Sequence record: MK250019.1
DNA: 64,000 nt
Reading direction: 5' to 3' (one strand)
The notes beneath the pieces were generated by a model that searched no databases, had not been told where the DNA came from, and worked only from the letters and a program-made list of their open reading frames with translations. This document shows, piece after piece, positions 2,909-43,699 of this stretch. Each line of letters opens with the position of its first letter. Within the stretch, counting starts at the first letter, position 1. The position numbers were made by a program, and so were the translations under genes.

Positions 2909-3952
2909 TTATGCCTGATAAGAATACTTGTCAAACATTGAATCAATATTAGAGGGATGTACAGCATTAATGCCGATTTCATCGCATTTTCTTAATGTAT
3001 CATGAAAATCATCTATAAGACATACCTCTTTAAGATCCCACTTCATCTTATGAGCAAGCTGCTCAATAAAGACGTGCTTGAAATTTTTATTTCCAACGAA
3101 CATTCGGTTCTCAACAGGAATTTCAGGAAAATATTTATCAAGCCATTCATTCTTCTCCTTCCACGCAATTGAATTGGCACATGCAGTAACAATATATACA
3201 TTATTCATGTCATAATGTTCCTTTACAAAATCAATAACATGTTTCACTGGTTTCAGATTTTTAAATAGTTCGCTACTTACAAAATCGGAATTACCATGAA
3301 TGTCAAGTTTTGCTTTGCCATAACAGGCTAATGTACCATCCATGTCAAGAAGTAAATACTTATTAGTAAAATAATCAACGCGTATGAATTCATCTACTAA
3401 TGGAATATATTTATTCTTACATGCTTCAATACGTAAGTTTTTCTTATAAATATCTTCAACTGGAACTTTACGAGTTCGACCTTGAAGTCTCTTTATACAA
3501 ACTTCTACTGGAGTATCGAAGAATACACAAGTAATCTTATCTACATTATGTTCTCTTAAATAATCTATAATACTAAGATTATAATGATTATTAATTCCAC
3601 CACCATCAAGAATAATATTAACGTTTAGATTTTTTGATTTTGCAATTTCAAAAATCATTCGTCTTGCTAATTGAACAGAATCCTCATGAACAACTTCAGG
3701 ATGTTCATCAGTATATCCTTCTAACATAGGTTTAATTTCATCGGCAGAAATAATCCATGTAGAATTATCAATTAAATTATTCTCTAATGCCTCATTAATG
3801 TCTTCAAATGAATAATCATCAAATGGATGTGTTGTTGACAATAGAGTTGACAACATATCACATAAATGACCTGCATCTGAATAATTATTTGAAATAAACG
3901 TAGACTTGCCAGAACATGGCAACCCTACGAAATACATAAACTTACTGATCAT
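2909..3952 (-). CDS. Polynucleotide kinase/phosphatase-like protein (AAA_33 kinase plus HAD domain; PseT architecture)
   Basis: Walker A GLPCSGKS; HAD motif LLDMDGTL; LIDD. Confidence 0.8.
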   Translation of the reverse strand: MISKFMYFVGLPCSGKSTFISNNYSDAGHLCDMLSTLLSTTHPFDDYSFEDINEALENNLIDNSTWIISADEIKPMLEGYTDEHPEVVHEDSVQLARRMIFEIAKSKNLNVNIILDGGGINNHYNLSIIDYLREHNVDKITCVFFDTPVEVCIKRLQGRTRKVPVEDIYKKNLRIEACKNKYIPLVDEFIRVDYFTNKYLLLDMDGTLACYGKAKLDIHGNSDFVSSELFKNLKPVKHVIDFVKEHYDMNNVYIVTACANSIAWKEKNEWLDKYFPEIPVENRMFVGNKNFKHVFIEQLAHKMKWDLKEVCLIDDFHDTLRKCDEIGINAVHPSNIDSMFDKYSYQA

Positions 3953-3958
3953 AACCTA

Positions 3959-4894
3959 TTATAAATTAAATTGATCTTTAATTCTATCCCATTTTCTATG
4001 TAATATATCTGTACATTGTATAGCATAATTATATAACTTAATAACATCATTTTTTCTAGAAAAATATGCTTGTATACAATTATGATTATCTATACGTAAA
4101 TGAAAATTAATATTATAATACTAATTAATAAGATTAAATAATTCAATATATAAAGATTTCCAACTTATATGATTACTTATTGATATTGATATACTATTTC
4201 TCGATTTAGAAATACATCCATCACCATCTAGAAATCCTATTAAAAAATATATTAAATATACTTTATCATAGAATATTGAAATATCTGGAGGATTATATGT
4301 TTTCTACTTATTTATGAGATTAAAAGTTTTTAACCATTTTTCACAAAATGATTTATCTCCTATACGTATATAACAATTCATATATTTCCCAAAAGTAGAA
4401 TTTGCTTCATGTTCTCTAACATTTGTATTTAATTTATCTGCTAATAACTATAAATTATGTTTATCTTTATTAGAAAGAGATATAATAAATTCATTTCTTG
4501 CAGATATACAACCGTCAGCCATAAAAAATCCCCACCAATAATAGACTTCTTTATTATTTAAATTATTCATAAAATTTAAATTACCATGTCTACGACGATT
4601 TATATTATGTGAAAATTTCATTCGTTCACACGCTTGAAACTAAATAGCATTATAACTAAGATTTGGAAATGCATCTAATAATTCCTATTTAGATGCATTA
4701 TACCATAAATCTCTTAATTTTTCATTATTTTCATTAGTCCACTTAAAATTACAATGTATTTGTAATTCATGAGCTTTCTTTTTAATTGCACTTTTTGTTC
4801 TATTTGGTAATAATTTAATACATTCAGTTAATCCTGATATAGGATAATACTACTTTAATATATTAATTTCATTATCAGTCCAAAAATTATACAT
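3959..4894 (-). mobile_element. Free-standing double-motif LAGLIDADG homing endonuclease (311 aa, TAG=Gln)
   Basis: WGFFMADGCIS and IGFLDGDGCIS motifs; 936 nt open apart from at least 5 TAG codons. Confidence 0.85.
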
Positions 4895-4912: not shown

Positions 4913-6493
4913 TTAGATTGTGCCATCAAGAAGTTTATGAACTGCATCTTGACGTGTTTTACGAATTTCTGCAAGTGTAAACTCTTTTACAAGCTTACCG
5001 TCTTCAAACACCGTCTTCAATTCATTCTTATCTGATGCTTCATCTTCAATAGAAACTCGATCAATAGGTTTATAATTACCATTTTCATCCTTTACAACCA
5101 TAATAAGACCACGATGTGATTTCTTTGGTGTACCAGTAACAGTCTTTGGATCTTTAAAAATTTCAATAGATTTCCCATTTACAGAGCACCATGTTGCCTT
5201 ACATGCAAATGCTAATTGATCTCTAGTATTCATTTGAAAAGAAAATGATCCAATTCCCAAAATCAAATTAGTAGCAGCAAACATCTTATCTTCAAGTTGT
5301 GCATAAATCATTCTTTGACGTTTCATATTGATAGAATCACCATAAAGAAGTCCAATATGTGTATCAAGTACTTTATATCCCTTCTTATTAAATGTTCCAC
5401 CAAATATATTCCAAAGAAATTCATATGAACCCATCTTTACAAATTGATCATTTGCTTCTGAATCACCACAAATAATCTTTACAGGATCACCACTATCAGG
5501 ACGGATAACTACTCGACCATTTCGACTCATAATCTGTTCCTTATACTTAGGTACGATCTTTGTAATAAAATACCAATAATCATAGCCGTCTGCTACAATA
5601 GAAATAATACCATCAGGAAATTCATCAAGCATTCTCTTAAAATAAATTTCATCATCAGGAATACCAGAATCATTTGTTGCATTTGAACATTCCACTGAAT
5701 GTTCTGTTGCTGGTACTGTAGCTGCAATTAATTCTTTCTTAGGGTCTGCTTTATAATAGTACTCAATCATTTTAATTGCAGGTACCGATTCAGAACCACA
5801 AAATGATGTAAGATGTGCCATGCCTGAAGTGATTGTAGTTTCAAGAGAACTCATACCTCTCATTGAAAAATCATGACACAAAAAATCAAGGTTAGACAAA
5901 TCATTAGGATTATAAAAACCTGTTTTCATTGCATGTCTAACAAGTTCACGTCTATAAACATCTGAAATTGTAGCGGATGTCATTGGTTGCCACAAAATAT
6001 TTGAAAGAATAGACTCCAAATAATTAGTAAGCCAAGCAAAATCAGGATGTGTGTTTGTGATTGTCAAAACAGGACATCCGATTGGACAATATGAACCTTC
6101 AGGAAGTGCCTTAATTCTAATAGGGAGATAACCAAGCTTATGCAAAGCAATAATATGATCTACTCCTACTTTCTTTGCAACTGCTTCACCAAGAAATGAT
6201 GTAGTTAAATCAGTATATGTTTTTCTAACAGTATCTTCATCAAGGTTAAAGAAGAAATTATTAAACGTATTAATAAGATACTTCTTGATAAAATACTGAA
6301 TACCAAATACAACTACACCTTCATTTGCCTCTGGGAGGTACTTATTTCCTCGTGGTGTAAAATTACTAAAAAGTTGTGTCATTCCCTTAGGATACATACA
6401 GTGATGACCAAGCTTGTAGCCATCAGTCATAAGCATTGCATTGAGAAGTATGTCTTCTACCATTACATGCTGAGAATCTTTTACGTTTGTCAT
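4913..6493 (-). CDS. nadV: Nicotinamide phosphoribosyltransferase (NAMPT)
   Basis: TDGYKLGH, HDFSMRG, PATEHSV, VIRPDSGDP, LLYGDSI. Confidence 0.95.
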   Translation of the reverse strand: MTNVKDSQHVMVEDILLNAMLMTDGYKLGHHCMYPKGMTQLFSNFTPRGNKYLPEANEGVVVFGIQYFIKKYLINTFNNFFFNLDEDTVRKTYTDLTTSFLGEAVAKKVGVDHIIALHKLGYLPIRIKALPEGSYCPIGCPVLTITNTHPDFAWLTNYLESILSNILWQPMTSATISDVYRRELVRHAMKTGFYNPNDLSNLDFLCHDFSMRGMSSLETTITSGMAHLTSFCGSESVPAIKMIEYYYKADPKKELIAATVPATEHSVECSNATNDSGIPDDEIYFKRMLDEFPDGIISIVADGYDYWYFITKIVPKYKEQIMSRNGRVVIRPDSGDPVKIICGDSEANDQFVKMGSYEFLWNIFGGTFNKKGYKVLDTHIGLLYGDSINMKRQRMIYAQLEDKMFAATNLILGIGSFSFQMNTRDQLAFACKATWCSVNGKSIEIFKDPKTVTGTPKKSHRGLIMVVKDENGNYKPIDRVSIEDEASDKNELKTVFEDGKLVKEFTLAEIRKTRQDAVHKLLDGTI

Positions 6494-6696
6494 AAAATTA
6501 ATTTATTTGTTTTTATTATTTGATTACAATAATAATCTGTTTGTTTGATTAACTGTAATCGTTATTTATATATTATGTTAACTTTAAAGTCTATATTTTT
6601 CATTAAAAAATAACATCCTATTTTCACAAACAAGATGTTATTATTTGATTTAATTTTTTATATGTTTAATTATAAAAATAAAAAGGATCTTTTTAA

Positions 6697-7242
6697 TTAA
6701 GCAACTTCACGTACTTCCCAATCACTGATTTCTACATCATACTTTTCTTTGTTAATTGAAATAGATTTGATGTTCTTAAGCGACAATGTACGATATTCAA
6801 TAACTGCAGTACTTGCCTTTTTCTTTGGCATAAATCTTTCCATATATGCTTTGTCAACTACAGAAATTGGTTCATCATTAAGAATAATGTTATTCTTGCA
6901 GTAGTTGTTAGGAATGTAAATCAAACATACATTACCTGTACTGATATACTGCATGATGACATTCTTAACAATATGACGTCTATTTGTATCAGTTGCCTTA
7001 TAATCTTCTCCAAGAATTTTACTCATTGTTTTCTCATAATCCTGTCCAAAATGGAAAGTTACAGAGAAACTTGTACGAGGCTGAAAGTCATCCTTGATTC
7101 TTTCCTTTGGAAGACCATCGGTGTTGAACTTATTCAACTTAATATCTGATTCACCATAAACGGTTACATATTTACCATTACACTTAGCGTTTGCCATAAT
7201 GTTGATGAACTCGTCTACTGATGTGATAATATTTGTATTCAT
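6697..7242 (-). CDS. Hypothetical protein
   Basis: 181-aa ORF behind a TGTATCTTTG box. Confidence 0.75.
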   Translation of the reverse strand: MNTNIITSVDEFINIMANAKCNGKYVTVYGESDIKLNKFNTDGLPKERIKDDFQPRTSFSVTFHFGQDYEKTMSKILGEDYKATDTNRRHIVKNVIMQYISTGNVCLIYIPNNYCKNNIILNDEPISVVDKAYMERFMPKKKASTAVIEYRTLSLKNIKSISINKEKYDVEISDWEVREVA

Positions 7243-9916: not shown

Positions 9917-10243
9917 TTAATCATCATCAAAATTATCATATATAGAAATTTTATTCTTTTTTCGTTCTTTCTGCTTTTCAATACACGGGAAACAGTATTC
10001 ACCAATACCTTTTATATATTTTTCATTTGTATATGTTGGTTCACCTTTAAAATTAAAATTTCGTTGTTCACCGTATGCAATATGTTTCTTCTTTTTCCAT
10101 TTAACAACTTTATCATGTTGTACTTCAATATCTCGAAGCTCTTTATATTTATTTTTTATTTTATATTTTTTATCGCCTTCTATAACAAAACTAGATGAAC
10201 CTTTTTTACTAATTTTATGTGACTGATGATAACTTCTAGACAT
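9917..10243 (-). CDS. Basic hypothetical protein
   Basis: 108-aa ORF within an operon. Confidence 0.65.
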   Translation of the reverse strand: MSRSYHQSHKISKKGSSSFVIEGDKKYKIKNKYKELRDIEVQHDKVVKWKKKKHIAYGEQRNFNFKGEPTYTNEKYIKGIGEYCFPCIEKQKERKKNKISIYDNFDDD

Positions 10244-10551: not shown

Positions 10552-10953
10552 TTAATATTCATCATCTATTTCATCACATAAATCTAAAAATTCCTCCTGT
10601 ATTGCATTATCCAAAATTTGAAATTCTCTGCGTTCGTTATATTCGTCTTCTGATTTAATCGCATCTGCCCAATCTGCATCAATATCATATACTTTTCTTG
10701 TATCTGTTGACATAACACGAATCATATTATGAATTTCTTTTTGCTTTCTGAATCCATAATCAGAAATATATCGTTCTACAAGAATTTCTTTTTTAAATAT
10801 AGGAATAATACAAATGAGTTTCGTATTCATTTCATCTTTCTCACATGAATGAATACCAGGAATCAACAATACAGACTTACCTGTTTCTACATTTATATTA
10901 TATGATGTATTACTGCGAAGAAATACAAGATCACCAATTTTAAATTCTGCCAT
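10552..10953 (-). CDS. Hypothetical protein
   Basis: 133-aa ORF after a promoter box. Confidence 0.7.
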   Translation of the reverse strand: MAEFKIGDLVFLRSNTSYNINVETGKSVLLIPGIHSCEKDEMNTKLICIIPIFKKEILVERYISDYGFRKQKEIHNMIRVMSTDTRKVYDIDADWADAIKSEDEYNERREFQILDNAIQEEFLDLCDEIDDEY

Positions 10954-11107: not shown

Positions 11108-11208
11108 TAGATGTAGGGAGACTTGAACTCCCAAATTCCATACCTAGAATACCATGAAATAAACTCAAAATATTATTGAGTTGCGTTTACCCATTTCGCC
11201 ATACATCT
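11108..11208 (-). tRNA. Class II (Leu/Ser-like) tRNA-like gene with an abnormal 9-nt anticodon loop and 30-nt variable arm
   Basis: Acceptor AGATGTA/TACATCT; D arm GCGAAATGGGTAAACGC; T arm GGGAG-TTCAAGT-CTCCC; anticodon stem ACTCA/TGAGT around ATAATATTT. Confidence 0.65.
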
Positions 11209-11420
11209 ATAAAAAGGTAGTTTCTTATCCGAATGCAGTCTAACTACCAAACCTTGAGTATCACATTTCGTACGTTTCCCAGATATTGTGACATCTGCTT
11301 ACTATATTACTATAATAAGTTAATCCTTGAATCACTTAAACCTAATTTAATAGGGATACATGTCAATCCATGATTAAAAAGTCTTTAGCTTAACAATATT
11401 AAAAAATATCGCAAGGATTG

Positions 11421-11492
11421 CAGCCCTAATAAGATTCGAACTTATAACATCACAATTAAATATTATGTGCTCTACCATTGAGCTATAGGGCC
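11421..11492 (-). tRNA. tRNA-Lys(TTT)-like gene with A instead of U at position 33
   Basis: GGCCCTA/TAGGGCT; GCTC-AATGGTA-GAGC; CATAA-TATTTAA-TTGTG; ATAAG-TTCGAAT-CTTAT. Confidence 0.7.
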
Positions 11493-11579
11493 AAGGTCTT
11501 ATTTTAAATTTCCACGCAATAAGACCTTAGATTTTTGTAGATATGTGTTCATAGTACTTAAACTAATGCTTGTAAATAT

Positions 11580-11671
11580 ACTGACGTGTTAACCACTTCA
11601 CCAATCGCCCATATATATTGTTTTTTGCTTTAATTGAGGGCAATACGGGAATCGAACCCGTGTTGGTCAGT
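11580..11671 (-). tRNA. Candidate circularly permuted tRNA gene (3' half 11671-11637, 26-nt linker, 5' half 11610-11580)
   Basis: The halves complement each other in the acceptor (GGGCGAT/ATTGCCC) and anticodon (TCAGT/ACTGA) stems; canonical D and T arms. Confidence 0.7.
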
Positions 11672-11871
11672 AAAATTCATGATGTATCACGAATGAACTA
11701 TGACAATCTAACATTTACTGTAATACTAAAGCTCTTGACTCAATGCTAATGCTAAAATCTAGGATTTTGTTTATGCTAAATGTAATCAAGCTAATGCTTT
11801 AGTCAATTTACATTATTTATATATCAAACAATATACAAAGTCTATTTTTATTCTTAAAATAATTTCACTTA

Positions 11872-11879
11872 AATAAATA
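11872..11879 (+). promoter_or_regulatory. T4-late-like promoter AATAAATA
   Basis: About 30 nt upstream of the ATG at 11908. Confidence 0.45.
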
Positions 11880-11907
11880 TCATAAATGAAATAGTTATCG
11901 TAACTAA

Positions 11908-13125
11908 ATGAAAAAGAATAATTATCTATATGAAGAAATGATACAGGATATTTCTGTTATCGTTAAACATCGAATAAATGAAGCATATGATAATCAACTT
12001 CTTGAAGAATATGGTGCAAAAGATATATTTAATGATGTAATGAAAGAAGCTACAAAAGATGGAAAAATCTTTTATACACATCTTAAAAAATTTATTATTT
12101 ATGTTATCAAAAAACTTCAAGAAACAAATCAATATAAGCAAGCAGAAAAAATGATGAATGCATATGTTCAGAAAATATAGAAATATATAAATGAACATAA
12201 AAAGATTACACCTCGTCGTATGTTAAAAATTACAGTTACTGTATTAGCAATATATGGCGGTGTATCAATGGTATAGGATTGTAAATCACTAATAAAATCA
12301 CTACAAAATAATGTAGAAACATATGAGCAAACAGCAGAAGATATTCCAGATTTACAATAGGAAAATATTACTGTTGATGAACCAGAAAATTTTGTAGTCA
12401 ATGTAAAGGATGAAGCAAAATAGACATTAAGTGTTAAACATGTTTCATAGGAAGATATTAATAATTCTCCTGCAAATAAATTCGAACATGATAAGAATTT
12501 CAATTTTAAATCAAGTAACAGTGCACGTGAATTTATTAAAAAACATGAAATGCTTCTACTTTATCCTTATTATGCAAATGAAGCTGAAGAAAAACAAGGT
12601 AAAGTAACTATAGGTTATGGACATGTTGTATTAGAAACTGATGGTGCATTATATCAGCAAATACAACAATTAAAAAAGAAAGGTCTTATAAAGCAGTCAT
12701 TTACTCGTGATAAGAAAACAGGAAAACTTATATTAAATCCTAAACATTGTAAACCAATTATTACAAAAGTGCAAGCAAATAAATTATTCTTAAAAGATAT
12801 TAAGATAGCAGAAGATAGAGCATATAAAGCATTGCAAGATATGCCTACTGATGATGATAATGTTAAGTGCTATATGTTATATAATCAAAAAATAAGAGAT
12901 GGATTAACATCACTATGTTATAATGCTGGTAATCTTAAACATGATAAGTATTCATTTATAACAAAAGGACTTGCAAAATGTAGATATGATTATAAAAACC
13001 AGAAAATTAATCCAGGTGATTATAATGTATCATTCAGTTATTTTAAAAATATTAAAGATAATCCTAATAGAAGAAATGAAGAATATAAGTTATTCTTTAT
13101 GAATGCAAATAAATCAATGTCATAA
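11908..13125 (+). CDS. Lysozyme (GH24-like) fusion with N-terminal leader and hydrophobic segment (405 aa, 5 TAG)
   Basis: C-terminal REFIKKHE...TIGYGH...LTSLCYNAG...RRNEEYKLF; 1218 nt in frame. Confidence 0.8.
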
Positions 13126-18484: not shown

Positions 18485-18605
18485 TATTATGCTTTTATTT
18501 AGTTTTTATATTTATTATATATAAAAATAGGTAATATGTTTATGAAAAATACATATTACCTATCAAACAAAATTAAACAATTAAATATATATATTATGAA
18601 AAATG

Positions 18606-18997
18606 TGGAGACATCCGGAGTCGAACCGGAGTATTACTAACTTGTCAATAATAAACTATCTACGTGCGTATTTCTTAATTAGTTTTCATCATACATTCTT
18701 AGGAGTTAAACAGTTTAATGTCTTAATCACTCTTATTGGACAAAAAGTATAGTGAGTTTTATTTAACAGAGAAAACACTCACCGAACTCCGTGGCGATGC
18801 TCAACTTACCTTGTAAGGAGCAAATGCTTCAATGGGTTTATATTACCAATCCTACCGGATTAAGCTGCCATACGAAAATCAATTTCGTCGTCATTTAAAT
18901 TTATTTGCTAAATTTCTTTGTATTACTACAAAAGGCTTTTAACTTTCCTACACGATTTATTATCACATAATTAATAAGCAAAACCAAAAATGTCCCC
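18606..18997 (-). ncRNA. ssrA: tmRNA (one-piece), tag about (A)DDEIDFRMAA*
   Basis: GGGGACA/TGTCTCC acceptor with G3.U70; T arm CCGG-TTCGACT-CCGG; internal GAC GAC GAA ATT GAT TTT CGT ATG GCA GCT TAA. Confidence 0.9.
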
Positions 18998-20828: not shown

Positions 20829-20866
20829 AATTGTAAAAAATTAAAAATATTACTAATGTCATGTCG

Positions 20867-20938
20867 TTGGGGATCCGAGACTCGAACTCGGCCTAAGAGT
20901 TTTAGAGACTCCTGTACTGACCACTATACTAATCCCCA
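20867..20938 (-). tRNA. Amber-suppressor tRNA, anticodon CUA, Gln-type body
   Basis: TGGGGAT/ATCCCCA (U1-A72, G2-C71, G3-C70); GGAGT-CT CTA AA-ACTCT; CCGAG-TTCGAGT-CTCGG. Confidence 0.95.
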
Positions 20939-21739: not shown

Positions 21740-21771
21740 AATAATTTTTAATATTTAATAACCATATTTTG

Positions 21772-21845
21772 TAGCCCCACTCAGATTCGAACTGAGTCAG
21801 CGAAAGTTAGAGTTTCGAATACTTAAACCATTACATCATAGGGCA
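21772..21845 (-). tRNA. Second amber-suppressor tRNA, anticodon CUA, Gln-type body
   Basis: TGCCCTA/TGGGGCT (1:72 mismatch); CGAAA-CT CTA AC-TTTCG; CTCAG-TTCGAAT-CTGAG. Confidence 0.93.
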
Positions 21846-41612: not shown

Positions 41613-42851
41613 TTATTGTTTATTAATCCATTCTTTTACTTCATTAATATTCCAAAATTCTATATAATTCAAATTATTCTACTATGATATATTCCTTTTT
41701 TTCAAATCTAATATAGTCCATGTATAAATAATATTATCATATTGTGACTTCTTACCATTTTTATGTGCATTAGAATTTTCTGCTTTTTCTTTTAAGTTAT
41801 TCAGCTCATTTAAATCATATTCATTATTTTCATTAAATGGATGATAATGATGATAATGAGATCCGTTATATTCAATATATAAATCTAATGATGGTATATA
41901 AAAATCACAATTAAATGGATACAATTCTGATTTATATTGTCTAATACAATCTGAATATTTTTCTTTTAATAAATCAAAACATACATCTTCTTGATATGAT
42001 ATATTAAATGAATTATTTAATAATTTTGTATTATAAATTTTTTTCTATATTTCATTACTACTTAATATAGATGAAATTAAATTTTTATAGTATTGTGTCT
42101 ANNNNNNNNNNNNNNNNNNNNNCTTTTCTAAACATGTATTTTTTATTTTATCTTTTACATATTTAAGTTGACCAATATTTACGATACTATTAATATCATC
42201 TTCATTAGAAGCATATTTTTTAATACATGTATCTAATGACTAATTTCGAAATTTTTGAACTTTAAATACAGAATCAACACCATACTTTTCTAAACATGCT
42301 TTATGAGTTTTTTCTATTTTTTCAGGAATCTAACCTGTATACTCAACACCATATTTTTGTAAACATGTTTCTTTTGATTTTTGTTTAAATATTTCAGATT
42401 TTAAAGGGGATGTTACTCCATATCTTTGTAAACATGTTTCTCTTGCTTTAATTCTATTAGAATAATGTTCATCTCCATATTTTAATAAACATGTTTCTCT
42501 TATTTTATTATTAATCTATTGCTTTTTATCTACATCACTATATATGTCTTTTAATACTTTTTTAACTGTTATACCATCTAACATATTTGCATGTTCTTTA
42601 CAACATGTTTTATTAAATAATTGATTCTTTTTACCATTCAAAAATTTAACAGGTTTTCCACAAATAACACATACAGGGCGAACCTCTATATTATACTGTA
42701 TTCTCTTAATTGTTTCTCTTAATGACTATGAATCAGTATAGCGATTATCTAAATATTCCTTATACTCCTCAGAAATATTAGTTAATCGCTATACATTTAC
42801 ATGTCCATTAGATTTAATAAAATAATCTAATATAATCTAATCTGTTACCAT
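41613..42851 (-). mobile_element. Putative homing endonuclease, paralog of 33430-34437, with tandem CLxKYGV repeats; spans an N gap; TAG=Gln
   Basis: MVTD(TAG)IILDY..., CVICGKP, repeated TCLQ(R/K)YGV, YPFNCDFYIPSLDLYIEYNGSHYH. Confidence 0.7.
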
Positions 42852-42853
42852 AC

Positions 42854-43699
42854 TTAATAATTTTCATTTTTAGGTTGATCAACCTTATCATATGTTCCAT
42901 ATGTATTAAAATATTTCTGGAAATCACATGTCTTTACTTTGAAAATAATTCGCTCACCTCTACGTGACTGTAATCCAATAGGTGTACGAAGAACAAGTCC
43001 CTCTGCAAGATGTGGTTCCTCTGCAACCTTTGAATTAAATCCCTTCTTCACAAATTCAATTGCCTCATCTACAGTAAATGTACCCATAAATGGAACAATA
43101 TCGACACCGAGCTTCTTAAAAATTTCATCTCGATTCTCACGAAGCAAATACATATCATCTACCTTCACATCAAATCCAATAAATGAATTATCTTTTCTAT
43201 AGTATCCACCTGATTGAATTCCTGCACCAAATCCTTCACCATACAATGTATATCTCTTTGGAATTTTCGTTTCATCAAGTTCATATACATTGAATTGCGT
43301 ATTAAGTACGGACCATGTTTTTTCTTGCATTAGTTCATCTGTCACATACATTTCTTTAGAAAGACCCAATGCATTCAATACCTTATCTTCTGTCAATTCA
43401 GTTGTAAGATATGCATACAGCATCTTTGGGATCTGTGCATTATCAGTCTTTCCCTTATATGCAACATTCCACTTAATACCGATATTATTACCAATATCTG
43501 ATGTGATAAATTCACGGGTTACTTCAATTCGAGTGTTAGTTCCGTCTACCTTCTCCTCTGCATCAAACTTGCAATCCCGCAACCATTCCAACTCAGGTAC
43601 TGCAAATTCATCATAAGGCATGATTACATTATTTGCATCTCTCTTAAAGATTGTGTTAATCTTCTGATAAGTATTCTCACTTCTTTTCTGTTTACCCAT
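42854..43699 (-). CDS. RNA ligase (Rnl2-like nucleotidyltransferase)
   Basis: Motif I EKVDGTN; LYGEGFG; FIGFDV; EGLVLR; IFKVK. Confidence 0.88.
   Translation of the reverse strand: MGKQKRSENTYQKINTIFKRDANNVIMPYDEFAVPELEWLRDCKFDAEEKVDGTNTRIEVTREFITSDIGNNIGIKWNVAYKGKTDNAQIPKMLYAYLTTELTEDKVLNALGLSKEMYVTDELMQEKTWSVLNTQFNVYELDETKIPKRYTLYGEGFGAGIQSGGYYRKDNSFIGFDVKVDDMYLLRENRDEIFKKLGVDIVPFMGTFTVDEAIEFVKKGFNSKVAEEPHLAEGLVLRTPIGLQSRRGERIIFKVKTCDFQKYFNTYGTYDKVDQPKNENY

What the first reader, a model, noticed from the sequence alone, without database searches (positions are those of the whole stretch)
11580..11671. Apparently circularly permuted tRNA gene in a phage
Seen: on the minus strand the 3' half of a tRNA (ACTGA-CCAAC-ACGGG TTCGATT CCCGT-ATTGCCC-T; 35 nt, positions 39-73) comes first. 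A 26-nt A-rich linker follows, then the 5' half (GGGCGAT-TG-GTG AAGTGGTTAA CAC-G-TCAGT; 31 nt, positions 1-31). The halves pair in both the acceptor stem (7 bp, one G.U) and the anticodon stem (5/5), with the break in the anticodon loop. No other partner half is visible nearby. Established: permuted tRNA genes are known in some algae and an archaeon, maturing through a circular intermediate; I know of none in phages. Inference: RNase P/3' trimming removes the linker and a ligase (an Rnl2-like gene is at 42854) closes the anticodon loop. Alternatively it works as a permanently nicked, two-piece tRNA mimic. The anticodon cannot be read from the DNA.
Basis: partly seen in the sequence, partly recalled or inferred. 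Interest (0 to 1): 0.9.

Follow-up and report, generated by a model that had tools for sequence, protein, structure and literature searches.

The report
Phage Y-RNA-like tRNA mimic
The "scrambled tRNA gene" is real and under selection, but it is best read as the tRNA-shaped part of a larger phage non-coding RNA of the Y-RNA type, the partner of a Ro60-like ring protein, and not as a gene for a working tRNA.

Summary
On the minus strand of this Lak megaphage window, a tRNA 3' half (11671-11637), a 26-nt linker and the matching 5' half (11610-11580) lie in permuted order. ARAGORN calls a tRNA only after the halves are rearranged.

Twenty-five distinct homologues keep the same order. They come from Lak clades and from 95-190 kb gut phage contigs. 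Of 31 stem pairs, 28 show two-sided compensatory changes.

The anticodon stem never ends in a conserved 7-nt loop. It opens into a four-way junction closed by a covarying, bulged 14-bp clamp helix. A highly conserved 5' domain and a 3' hairpin flank it, about 314 nt in all (11806-11493). The element sits at the head of a tRNA array.

In all non-Lak homologues but one short contig, the RNA lies about 840-875 nt downstream of a DUF2828/DUF7788 gene on the same strand. The AlphaFold model of that protein matches only Ro60/TROVE structures at the top of the list. Lak encodes the same protein elsewhere.

This is the architecture of YrlA-type Y RNAs: T arm, closed acceptor stem, D arm. RNase P cutting at G1 is plausible.

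Verdict: a new variant of a known kind.

The parts
11711..11806 (-). 5' domain. It runs TTGACTAAAGC...TCCTAGA...ATTGAGTCAAGAGC..., is nearly invariant from Lak to the 95-190 kb phages, and is built of NAG(C)NN repeats. Its structure is unproven. The first ~16 nt could be DNA-level promoter rather than RNA.
   Evidence: Alignments. RNAalifold shows only invariant pairs and no covariation. Contigs from RNA libraries in two studies end at 11790.
11697..11710 (-). Clamp helix X, 5' strand: X3 TAGAT, X2 TGT, X1 CATAGT.
   Evidence: Pairs with 11555-11538. All 25 distinct sequences give 14 of 14 pairs, and every position covaries.
11672..11696 (-). Hairpin H1 (ATTCGTG...CATGAAT) plus a UUU junction, between the clamp and the tRNA-like module.
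   Evidence: A hairpin is present at this place in every member, but its sequence varies.
11637..11671 (-). tRNA-like 3' half: anticodon-stem 3' strand, 5-nt variable loop ending in C48, T arm, acceptor 3' strand, discriminator U.
11611..11636 (-). Acceptor loop (linker). It is A/U-rich and varies freely: 17-29 nt in Lak, L051, L079 and L111, and 67-130 nt with an inserted hairpin in the other phages. U at -1 lies before G1.
   Evidence: U at -1 in 23 of 25 sequences.
11580..11610 (-). tRNA-like 5' half: acceptor 5' strand starting at G1, U8, a near-invariant D arm (GGTGAAGNGGTTAACAC) with G15 and G18G19, and the anticodon-stem 5' strand.
   Evidence: RNA-library contigs from two studies end exactly at 11610.
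11556..11579 (-). Junction strand J, about 24 nt, containing AAGCAUUAGUUUAAG (NAG repeats).
11538..11555 (-). Clamp helix X, 3' strand: X1 ACTATG, AAC bulge, X2 ACA, 1-nt bulge, X3 ATCTA.
   Evidence: The AAC bulge is present in 24 of 25 sequences (AAA in one)..
11493..11528 (-). 3' hairpin. The 11-bp stem covaries and the 14-nt loop GCGUGGAAAUUUAA is invariant in Lak. It abuts G1 of tRNA-Lys.
   Evidence: The non-Lak members have an equivalent hairpin with a GAGGAU/GGGGAU/AGGGAU loop motif.
11421..11492 (-). tRNA-Lys(UUU), the first ordinary tRNA of the array. Its 5' processing would set the 3' end of the non-coding RNA.

Best explanation
The locus encodes a structured non-coding RNA of about 314 nt (minus strand, about 11806-11493) at the head of a phage tRNA operon.

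Structure. The core is a complete tRNA-shaped module whose strands are permuted. The acceptor end is closed by a variable loop. The anticodon end is replaced by a four-way junction, held shut by a bulged 14-bp clamp helix.

Class. This is the design of YrlA-type Y RNAs. I propose that the RNA is the partner of the phage's divergent Ro60-like ring protein (DUF2828 plus a vWA/MIDAS domain).

Processing, inferred. RNase P cutting at tRNA-Lys frees the 3' end. RNase P probably also cuts before G1 in the acceptor loop, because the module has a 7-bp acceptor stem, U at -1 and an intact T arm. The 3' half could then be trimmed and given CCA, as in Mycobacterium smegmatis YrlA. The result would be a two-piece RNA held together by 26 base pairs.

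Function, inferred. The tRNA mimic would let the RNP engage tRNA-recognising enzymes or a host exoribonuclease for tRNA/RNA surveillance or turnover during infection.

Shown versus inferred. Shown: the fold, the selection on it, family membership, the link to the Ro60-like gene in relatives, and presence of the region in contigs assembled from RNA libraries. Inferred: protein binding, cleavage and biological role.
For: RNA structure:
- Permuted order and pairing.
- Twenty-five distinct homologues, with 28 of 31 pairs covarying and 1 of 775 cells non-canonical.
- tRNA tertiary nucleotides kept: U8, A14, G15 with C48, G18G19, and a TTCGA T loop.
- Clamp helix with a conserved AAC bulge in 24 of 25 sequences.

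Link to a Ro60-like protein:
- In every non-Lak locus the RNA starts 15-21 nt (55 nt in L051) after a DUF7873 gene on the same strand. In 21 of 22 loci that gene follows a DUF2828/DUF7788 gene.
- The AlphaFold model of that protein (pLDDT 72) has Ro60/TROVE structures as its top 13 Foldseek matches, at full length, with E 1e-7 to 1e-4. A DxSxS MIDAS-type (metal-binding site) motif is invariant in its alignment.
- Lak-C1, Lak-B7 and a complete Lak-like record encode both DUF2828+DUF7788 and DUF7873.

Precedent and context:
- YrlA RNAs have the order T arm, acceptor-like stem-loop, D arm. They lie near Ro60 on the same strand, occur in phages, and one with a 7-bp acceptor stem is cut by RNase P and given CCA (PMC4201824). 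A phage Ro60 binds phage Y-like RNAs (PMC12135203).
- Sub-threshold but full-length Rfam YrlA hits lie in the same tRNA arrays of the related phages.
- Contigs from RNA libraries of three or four studies cover 11108-11790 but not 11834-12300, and several end at G1, 11610.
Against: - In Lak the Ro60-like gene is about 149 kb from the RNA, so the link rests on homology and co-occurrence.
- Pfam TROVE does not hit Lak.
- Rfam YrlA (RF02553) does not hit this element. Its weak hits in Lak fall on the neighbouring hairpin and tRNA-Lys.
- The YrlA motif GNCGAAN0-1G is absent as such.
- The element is about three times longer than YrlA and has extra domains.
- No binding or processing data exist. Contigs cannot prove RNA ends, and DNA may contaminate RNA libraries.
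- The X and anticodon-stem registers were chosen by best fit in my own script. RNAalifold did find the same helices independently, but only on the seven Lak-type sequences of alignment A2.
Confidence: 0.68

Rival explanations
1. A true circularly permuted tRNA gene. The precursor is cut at both flanks, the anticodon loop is sealed by the phage RNA ligase, the linker is removed by RNase P and 3' trimming, and a decoding tRNA results.
For: Every tRNA feature except the anticodon loop is present, and ARAGORN accepts all 25 rearranged sequences. The acceptor stem has 7 bp with U at -1 and a discriminator base. An RNA ligase lies in the window. The phage recodes TAG and carries many tRNAs.
Against: The flanks of the anticodon stem differ between clades: ATATTT/AATTTT, TTTAAC/TTAAA and CTTAGT/TAAAA. 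They give no shared loop or anticodon, and the Lak-A/B reading ATATTTT has a pyrimidine at position 37. Selection instead preserves a clamp helix, hairpin H1 and strand J around the stem end. There is no bulge-helix-bulge motif. No group I intron or other ribozyme was found by Rfam at E up to 10. The homologues belong to a Ro60-like operon.
Confidence: 0.05
2. A two-piece tRNA-like RNA that acts on its own, without Ro60. [quoted passage not shown] U73 with G1-C72 and G/C2, G/C3 resembles glycine identity (from my own knowledge).
For: A 7-bp acceptor stem, a conserved discriminator and U at -1. M. smegmatis YrlA does receive CCA (PMC4201824). Contig ends and one joint lie at G1. Gene order matches permuted tmRNA genes, and a weak tmRNA_permuted hit of 13.4 bits was found.
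Against: There is no G3.U70 and no conserved tag reading frame. A normal tmRNA lies at 18603-18997. In most relatives the linker is 67-130 nt with a stable hairpin, which is odd for a segment meant only to be discarded. Linkage to the Ro60-like gene also argues against it.
Confidence: 0.12
3. A cis-acting leader of the tRNA operon, serving as a processing scaffold or attenuator, with no role in trans.
For: It always sits directly upstream of the first tRNA of an 11-23 tRNA array. The 3' hairpin abuts tRNA G1.
Against: A full tRNA tertiary design and the strict co-occurrence with Ro60-like and DUF7873 genes are not needed for a leader. Similar units also lie inside arrays.
Confidence: 0.12
4. 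Non-functional remains of two tandem tRNA copies or of a rearrangement.
For: None beyond the bare order of the halves.
Against: Covariation in every stem across widely diverged phages, and no relative with two full tRNAs at this place.
Confidence: 0.01

Closest known systems
YrlA-type bacterial and phage Y RNAs (Rfam RF02553; Chen et al. 2014, PMC4201824)
   Same: A tRNA-like module in the order variable region, T arm, closed acceptor-like stem-loop, D arm, enclosed by a stem formed from the flanks. tRNA tertiary nucleotides are kept. In the related phages it is encoded next to, and on the same strand as, a Ro60-type protein. The class is known from phages.
   Different: It is not detected by the Rfam model. 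It has a full 5-bp anticodon stem and a strict 7-bp acceptor stem. It is about 314 nt long, with an extra conserved 5' domain and a 3' hairpin. It heads a tRNA array. The GNCGAA motif is absent. The partner is a DUF2828-type Ro60-like protein that Pfam TROVE does not recognise, always with a DUF7873 gene. In Lak the genes are dispersed.
Mycobacterium smegmatis YrlA
   Same: A 7-bp acceptor stem closed by a loop. This RNA is cut by RNase P and given CCA in vivo, which is the processing predicted here.
   Different: Processing here is only inferred. Sequence, size and context differ.
Thermus phage phiLo Ro60 with Yrl1/Yrl2 (PMC12135203; PDB 9KOP, 9L5Y)
   Same: A phage-encoded Ro60 ring protein with phage-encoded Y-like RNAs. 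These entries are among the best structural matches to the DUF2828 protein model.
   Different: The phiLo Yrl RNAs are described as stem-bulge-stem RNAs with a CGAA motif, not as full tRNA mimics. Protein sequence identity is about 13%.
Circularly permuted tRNA genes of Cyanidioschyzon merolae and other algae, and of Thermofilum (from my own knowledge)
   Same: The 3' half lies upstream of the 5' half on one strand, a linker joins the acceptor ends, and the break is at the anticodon side.
   Different: Those genes have a bulge-helix-bulge motif, a recoverable anticodon loop, and a splicing endonuclease-ligase pathway through a circular intermediate. None of these is present or supported here.
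Two-piece tmRNA from permuted ssrA genes
   Same: The T arm and acceptor 3' strand are encoded before the acceptor 5' strand. The intervening segment is excised, and the mature RNA stays in two pieces.
   Different: There is no G3.U70, no tag frame and no pseudoknots. A canonical D arm and anticodon stem are present, and the phage has its own one-piece tmRNA.

Membership tests
YrlA / Y RNA | tRNA-like module in the order T arm, acceptor-like stem-loop, D arm, enclosed by a stem formed from the flanks | tested here: met
   The Rfam YrlA consensus structure shows the same topology.
YrlA / Y RNA | Conserved tRNA tertiary nucleotides, including the 15:48 Levitt pair | tested here: met
   U8, A14, G15 and G18G19 in the D arm. 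Every variable loop ends in C. The T loop is TTCGA.
YrlA / Y RNA | Encoded within about 4 kb of a Ro60 orthologue on the same strand | tested here: inconclusive
   Met in 21 of 22 non-Lak loci: the gap is about 840-875 nt and the protein is Ro60-like by fold. Not met in Lak, where the DUF2828+DUF7788 gene lies at 26 kb and the RNA at 175 kb in Lak-C1.
YrlA / Y RNA | GNCGAAN0-1G (CGAA) motif near the 5' end | tested here: not met
   No such motif is conserved. The nearest are GUCAAGAG in the 5' domain and CGAAU in H1 of some members only.
YrlA / Y RNA | Reaches the Rfam RF02553 gathering score of 69 bits | tested here: not met
   No hit on the element at E up to 10 or in the relatives. Other units in the relatives' arrays score 34-40 bits.
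YrlA / Y RNA | Bound by Ro60 | not testable with these tools
   Needs EMSA or co-purification.
Ro60/TROVE proteins (for the partner gene) | HEAT-repeat ring followed by a vWA domain with a MIDAS motif | tested here: met
   The top 13 Foldseek matches of the model are all Ro60/TROVE at full length, and DxSxS is invariant. Sequence models do not detect TROVE. TM scores are only 0.33-0.56, so the match is at fold level.
Permuted tRNA genes (algal/archaeal type) | 3' half before 5' half on one strand, with acceptor ends joined by a linker | tested here: met
Permuted tRNA genes (algal/archaeal type) | Bulge-helix-bulge motif at the leader/trailer junction next to the anticodon stem | tested here: not met
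   The stem opens to hairpin H1 on one side and a 24-nt strand on the other, followed by the clamp helix.
Permuted tRNA genes (algal/archaeal type) | A recoverable, conserved 7-nt anticodon loop | tested here: not met
   Flanking bases differ between clades.
Permuted tRNA genes (algal/archaeal type) | Circular intermediate and joined mature tRNA | not testable with these tools
   Only assembled contigs were available. The one back-joint seen links tRNA-Lys to G1, not the anticodon sides.
Two-piece tmRNA | G3.U70 alanine identity, a tag reading frame, and the Rfam tmRNA_permuted score | tested here: not met
   Position 3:70 is G-C or C-G. The score is 13.4 bits against a threshold of 47. No conserved frame was seen in J.

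The most novel reading that the evidence does not exclude
[quoted passage not shown] It then works as an anticodon-less tRNA during infection by these recoded phages, either on the ribosome or as an amino-acid donor. Alternatively, its halves are joined in vivo into a real tRNA, which would be the first permuted tRNA gene outside eukaryotes and archaea.
Probability: 0.08. Interest if true: 0.9.

Novelty: new variant of a known kind. Interest (0 to 1): 0.55.

Why it matters
- It explains an apparent "impossible" tRNA gene in the largest gut phages as a tRNA mimic.
- It defines a widespread, unannotated RNA family: 28 IMG/VR contigs, further metagenome contigs, and none in 185,579 species genomes with the exact pattern.
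- It assigns a likely identity to two domains of unknown function. DUF2828/DUF7788 appears to be a Ro60-like ring protein, and DUF7873 is its constant neighbour.
- Ro60-Y RNA particles are studied in RNA quality control and autoimmunity. A phage branch tied to large tRNA arrays and stop-codon recoding gives a new, testable setting for what tRNA mimicry by Y RNAs is for.
- It also warns annotators that tRNA halves in phage arrays may be Y-like RNAs.

Tried and rejected
- Permuted group I intron (intron halves flanking the exons). Rfam at E up to 10 found no intron or ribozyme. There is no conserved terminal G, the flanks form a simple covarying clamp instead, and one base is lost or gained next to the stem between Lak-A and Lak-B.
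- Bulge-helix-bulge splicing: no such motif.
- Pfam TROVE in Lak: no hit. The partner was found only through DUF2828/DUF7788 and a fold search.
- Rfam YrlA on Lak genomes: the weak hits fall on the 3' hairpin plus tRNA-Lys or elsewhere, not on the element.
- The pattern hit L023 (a GC-rich giant-virus contig) was a chance match.
- An exact-pattern scan of the species genome collection found nothing.
- The 5' domain is single-copy in Lak genomes.
- DUF7873: no family name and no meaningful fold match.
- The sequence search of the Ro60-like protein against PDB was blank.
I left it out and did not send it elsewhere.
- A tmRNA-like tag frame: the short frame GCA-UUA-NNN-UAA in J is not kept in L030.
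- I did not run complex prediction, because I make no protein-protein claim.

Full report
**1. What is in the sequence**

The window is Prevotella phage Lak-A2/A1, at 100% identity over 2.5 kb. Lak-C1 is 97.6% identical and the Lak-B genomes about 77%.

- a tRNA 3' half at 11671-11637;
- a 26-nt linker at 11636-11611;
- the matching 5' half at 11610-11580.

ARAGORN and Rfam see only tRNA-Lys(UUU) next to it, at 11492-11421. ARAGORN calls a tRNA only once the halves are rearranged around any 7-nt loop. No other partner half exists in the window.

**2. Selection on the permuted fold**

Lak-B keeps the same order with compensatory changes:
- T stem: ACGGG/CCCGT becomes CATGG/CCATG.
- Acceptor stem: GGGCGAT/ATTGCCC becomes GGGGATT/AATCCCC.

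A metagenome scan added further Lak variants (L026, L027, L030), in which the anticodon stem also covaries: TCAGT/ACTGA becomes TTTAT/ATAAA.

RNAalifold on seven Lak-type sequences independently recovered the acceptor, T and anticodon stems. It also recovered a long helix formed by the two flanks. Nineteen of 44 pairs had two-sided changes.

The D arm is almost invariant, and U8, A14, G15 with C48 and G18G19 are kept. The linker varies freely in length and sequence.

**3. The anticodon end is not a loop**

In every member the 5-bp anticodon stem opens into a four-way junction with these parts:
- a hairpin (H1) on the 5' side;
- a strand of about 24 nt (J) on the 3' side;
- a clamp helix: 6 bp, a 3-nt bulge (AAC in 24 of 25 sequences), 3 bp, a 1-nt bulge, then at least 5 bp.

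All 25 distinct sequences give 14 of 14 clamp pairs, with covariation at every position. The bases next to the stem differ between clades and give no common loop or anticodon.

Over the acceptor, T, anticodon and clamp helices, 28 of 31 pairs show double changes, and 1 of 775 cells is non-canonical. The registers of the clamp and the variable loop were chosen by best fit in my script. For the Lak-type sequences, the RNAalifold result does not depend on that choice.

**4. A larger RNA and a wider family**

Two further elements flank the clamp:
- a 5' domain of about 95 nt (11806-11711), far more conserved than the tRNA-like part;
- a 3' hairpin (11528-11493) whose stem covaries and whose 14-nt loop is invariant in Lak.

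Searching viral contigs with the D-arm pattern gave mostly ordinary tRNA-His, Gln, Glu and Asp genes. It also found two non-Lak contigs with the same permuted unit and the same 5' domain (L051, L079).

A pattern from the 5' domain then found 28 viral contigs: Lak, about 20 contigs of 95-190 kb, and a few shorter contigs (38-77 kb). It found none in the species genome collection.

In all of these the element precedes an array of 11-23 tRNAs. In most non-Lak members the acceptor loop is 67-130 nt and holds a stable hairpin.

A covariance model of the core scores 85-96 bits on one site per genome. It also finds extra 43-bit units in the tRNA array of one 174-kb phage.

**5. The neighbouring genes**

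In every non-Lak locus the RNA begins 15-21 nt (55 nt in L051) after the stop codon of a 263-aa DUF7873 gene, on the same strand. In 21 of 22 loci that gene follows a 600-aa DUF2828/DUF7788 gene, which PHROGs labels "RNA-binding protein".

An AlphaFold model of the 600-aa protein (pLDDT 72) matches only Ro60/TROVE structures in its top 13 Foldseek rows. These include frog and human Ro60, Deinococcus Rsr and Thermus phage phiLo Ro60. The matches are full length, with E from 1e-7 to 1e-4. vWA/MIDAS domains follow below them. A DxSxS motif is invariant in the protein alignment.

Sequence methods do not see this relationship.

Lak-C1 and Lak-B7 encode a 453-aa DUF2828+DUF7788 protein and a 267-aa DUF7873 protein, far from the RNA. 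Both records that are at least 90% complete and carry the RNA also have the Ro60-like gene.

DUF7873 has no informative fold match.

**6. Comparison with what is known**

Chen et al. (PMC4201824) described YrlA Y RNAs with these properties:
- nearly invariant T and D stem-loops, with an acceptor-like stem-loop between them;
- tRNA tertiary pairs;
- a location within about 4 kb of Ro60 on the same strand;
- occurrence in 22 phages;

The Rfam YrlA consensus has the same topology.

Phage Ro60 binding phage Y-like RNAs and host PNPase has been shown for phiLo (PMC12135203). Ro60/TROVE with a tRNA-like partner is noted for some jumbo phages (PMC7824862).

The element here shares that architecture and, in its relatives, that gene context. 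It fails the Rfam score and lacks the GNCGAA motif. It is also larger and more tRNA-like, so I call it a new variant rather than a plain member.

Sub-threshold, full-length YrlA hits of 34-40 bits lie elsewhere in the relatives' tRNA arrays. This fits a Y-RNA setting.

**7. Evidence from RNA libraries**

Logan contigs from four RNA-library runs were laid at 80% likeness or more. Two of the runs look like one data set filed twice. The contigs cover 11108-11790 and leave 11834-12300 empty. One run also covers the gene at 10700-10896.

Contigs from two studies end exactly at 11610 (G1) and at 11790. One contig joins tRNA-Lys position 72, plus one base, to G1.

Compensatory changes appear there too: G11659A with C11647U.

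These are contigs, so they prove neither transcription nor ends. Conservation alone could explain the coverage pattern. I treat the ends at G1 as a hint of RNase P cleavage.

**8. Verdict**

The best explanation is a Y-RNA-like tRNA mimic that partners a divergent phage Ro60-like protein, at 0.68. Probable RNase P nicking at G1 would give a two-piece RNA. Protein binding, processing and function remain inferred.

An RNA ligase (PF09414) is encoded at 42854-43699. Nothing links it to this RNA.

Noticed in passing
window 11108-11208 (-): Rfam calls a tRNA (43 bits) with an insert of about 27 nt in the variable region and an odd anticodon loop. ARAGORN misses it.
   Followed up: no
window 18603-18997 (-); 20866-20938 and 21771-21845 (-): A one-piece tmRNA (tag DDEIDFRMAA) and two tRNAs with anticodon CUA. 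The latter fit TAG reassignment in Lak phages. Many ORFs here carry in-frame TAG codons.
   Followed up: partly
window 11422/11610 and 11606/11790 (RNA-library contigs): One contig joins the tRNA-Lys 3' end, plus one base, directly to G1 of the tRNA-like 5' half. This could be a circular or ligated RNA, or a tandem DNA copy. Another contig joins 11606 to 11790 on opposite strands. Contigs from two studies end at 11610 and at 11790.
   Followed up: partly
window 11611-11643 (run X15 contig): A near-identical relative lacks 26 nt here, reading ...CCCGT-A-GTTGGCC-GGGCGAT.... This would remove the linker and alter the acceptor 3' strand. It could be a variant, a chimera or a processed RNA. Unexplained.
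   Followed up: no
window 11711-11806 and 11556-11579 (-): The 5' domain and junction strand are built of NAG(C)NN repeats (UUUAGC, UUAAGC, CUCAGC, AUAAGC; AAGCAUUAGUUUAAG). They are almost invariant across very different phages and show no covariation. This looks like a protein-binding platform. Part of it could instead be promoter DNA.
   Followed up: partly
L111:6681-6807, 6924-6991, 6460-6511; L079:5832-5935; G003:C1:8010-8078 and 10119-10193: Further permuted tRNA-like units (T arm, closed acceptor hairpin, D arm) sit between ordinary tRNAs in the arrays of the 95-190 kb phages. They score 34-40 bits with Rfam YrlA and 43 bits with my model.
   Followed up: partly
L097:4260-6062 (-) and 3466-4257 (-); Lak-C1 record about 26.2 kb and 3.8 kb: DUF2828/DUF7788 proteins have a Ro60-like fold that sequence models miss. 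The search found 2275 relatives at E up to 1e-5. DUF7873 always lies between that gene and the RNA, and it has no known fold.
   Followed up: yes
L097:7615-8152 (-) and 6283-6387 (-): The 95-190 kb phages also carry a tmRNA and a RAGATH-34 RNA (76.7 bits) just upstream of the Ro60-like gene.
   Followed up: no
window 42854-43699 (-): A 281-aa ORF with the Pfam RNA_ligase domain (PF09414, E 6e-17). The neighbouring ORF 41613-42851 is DUF7487.
   Followed up: partly
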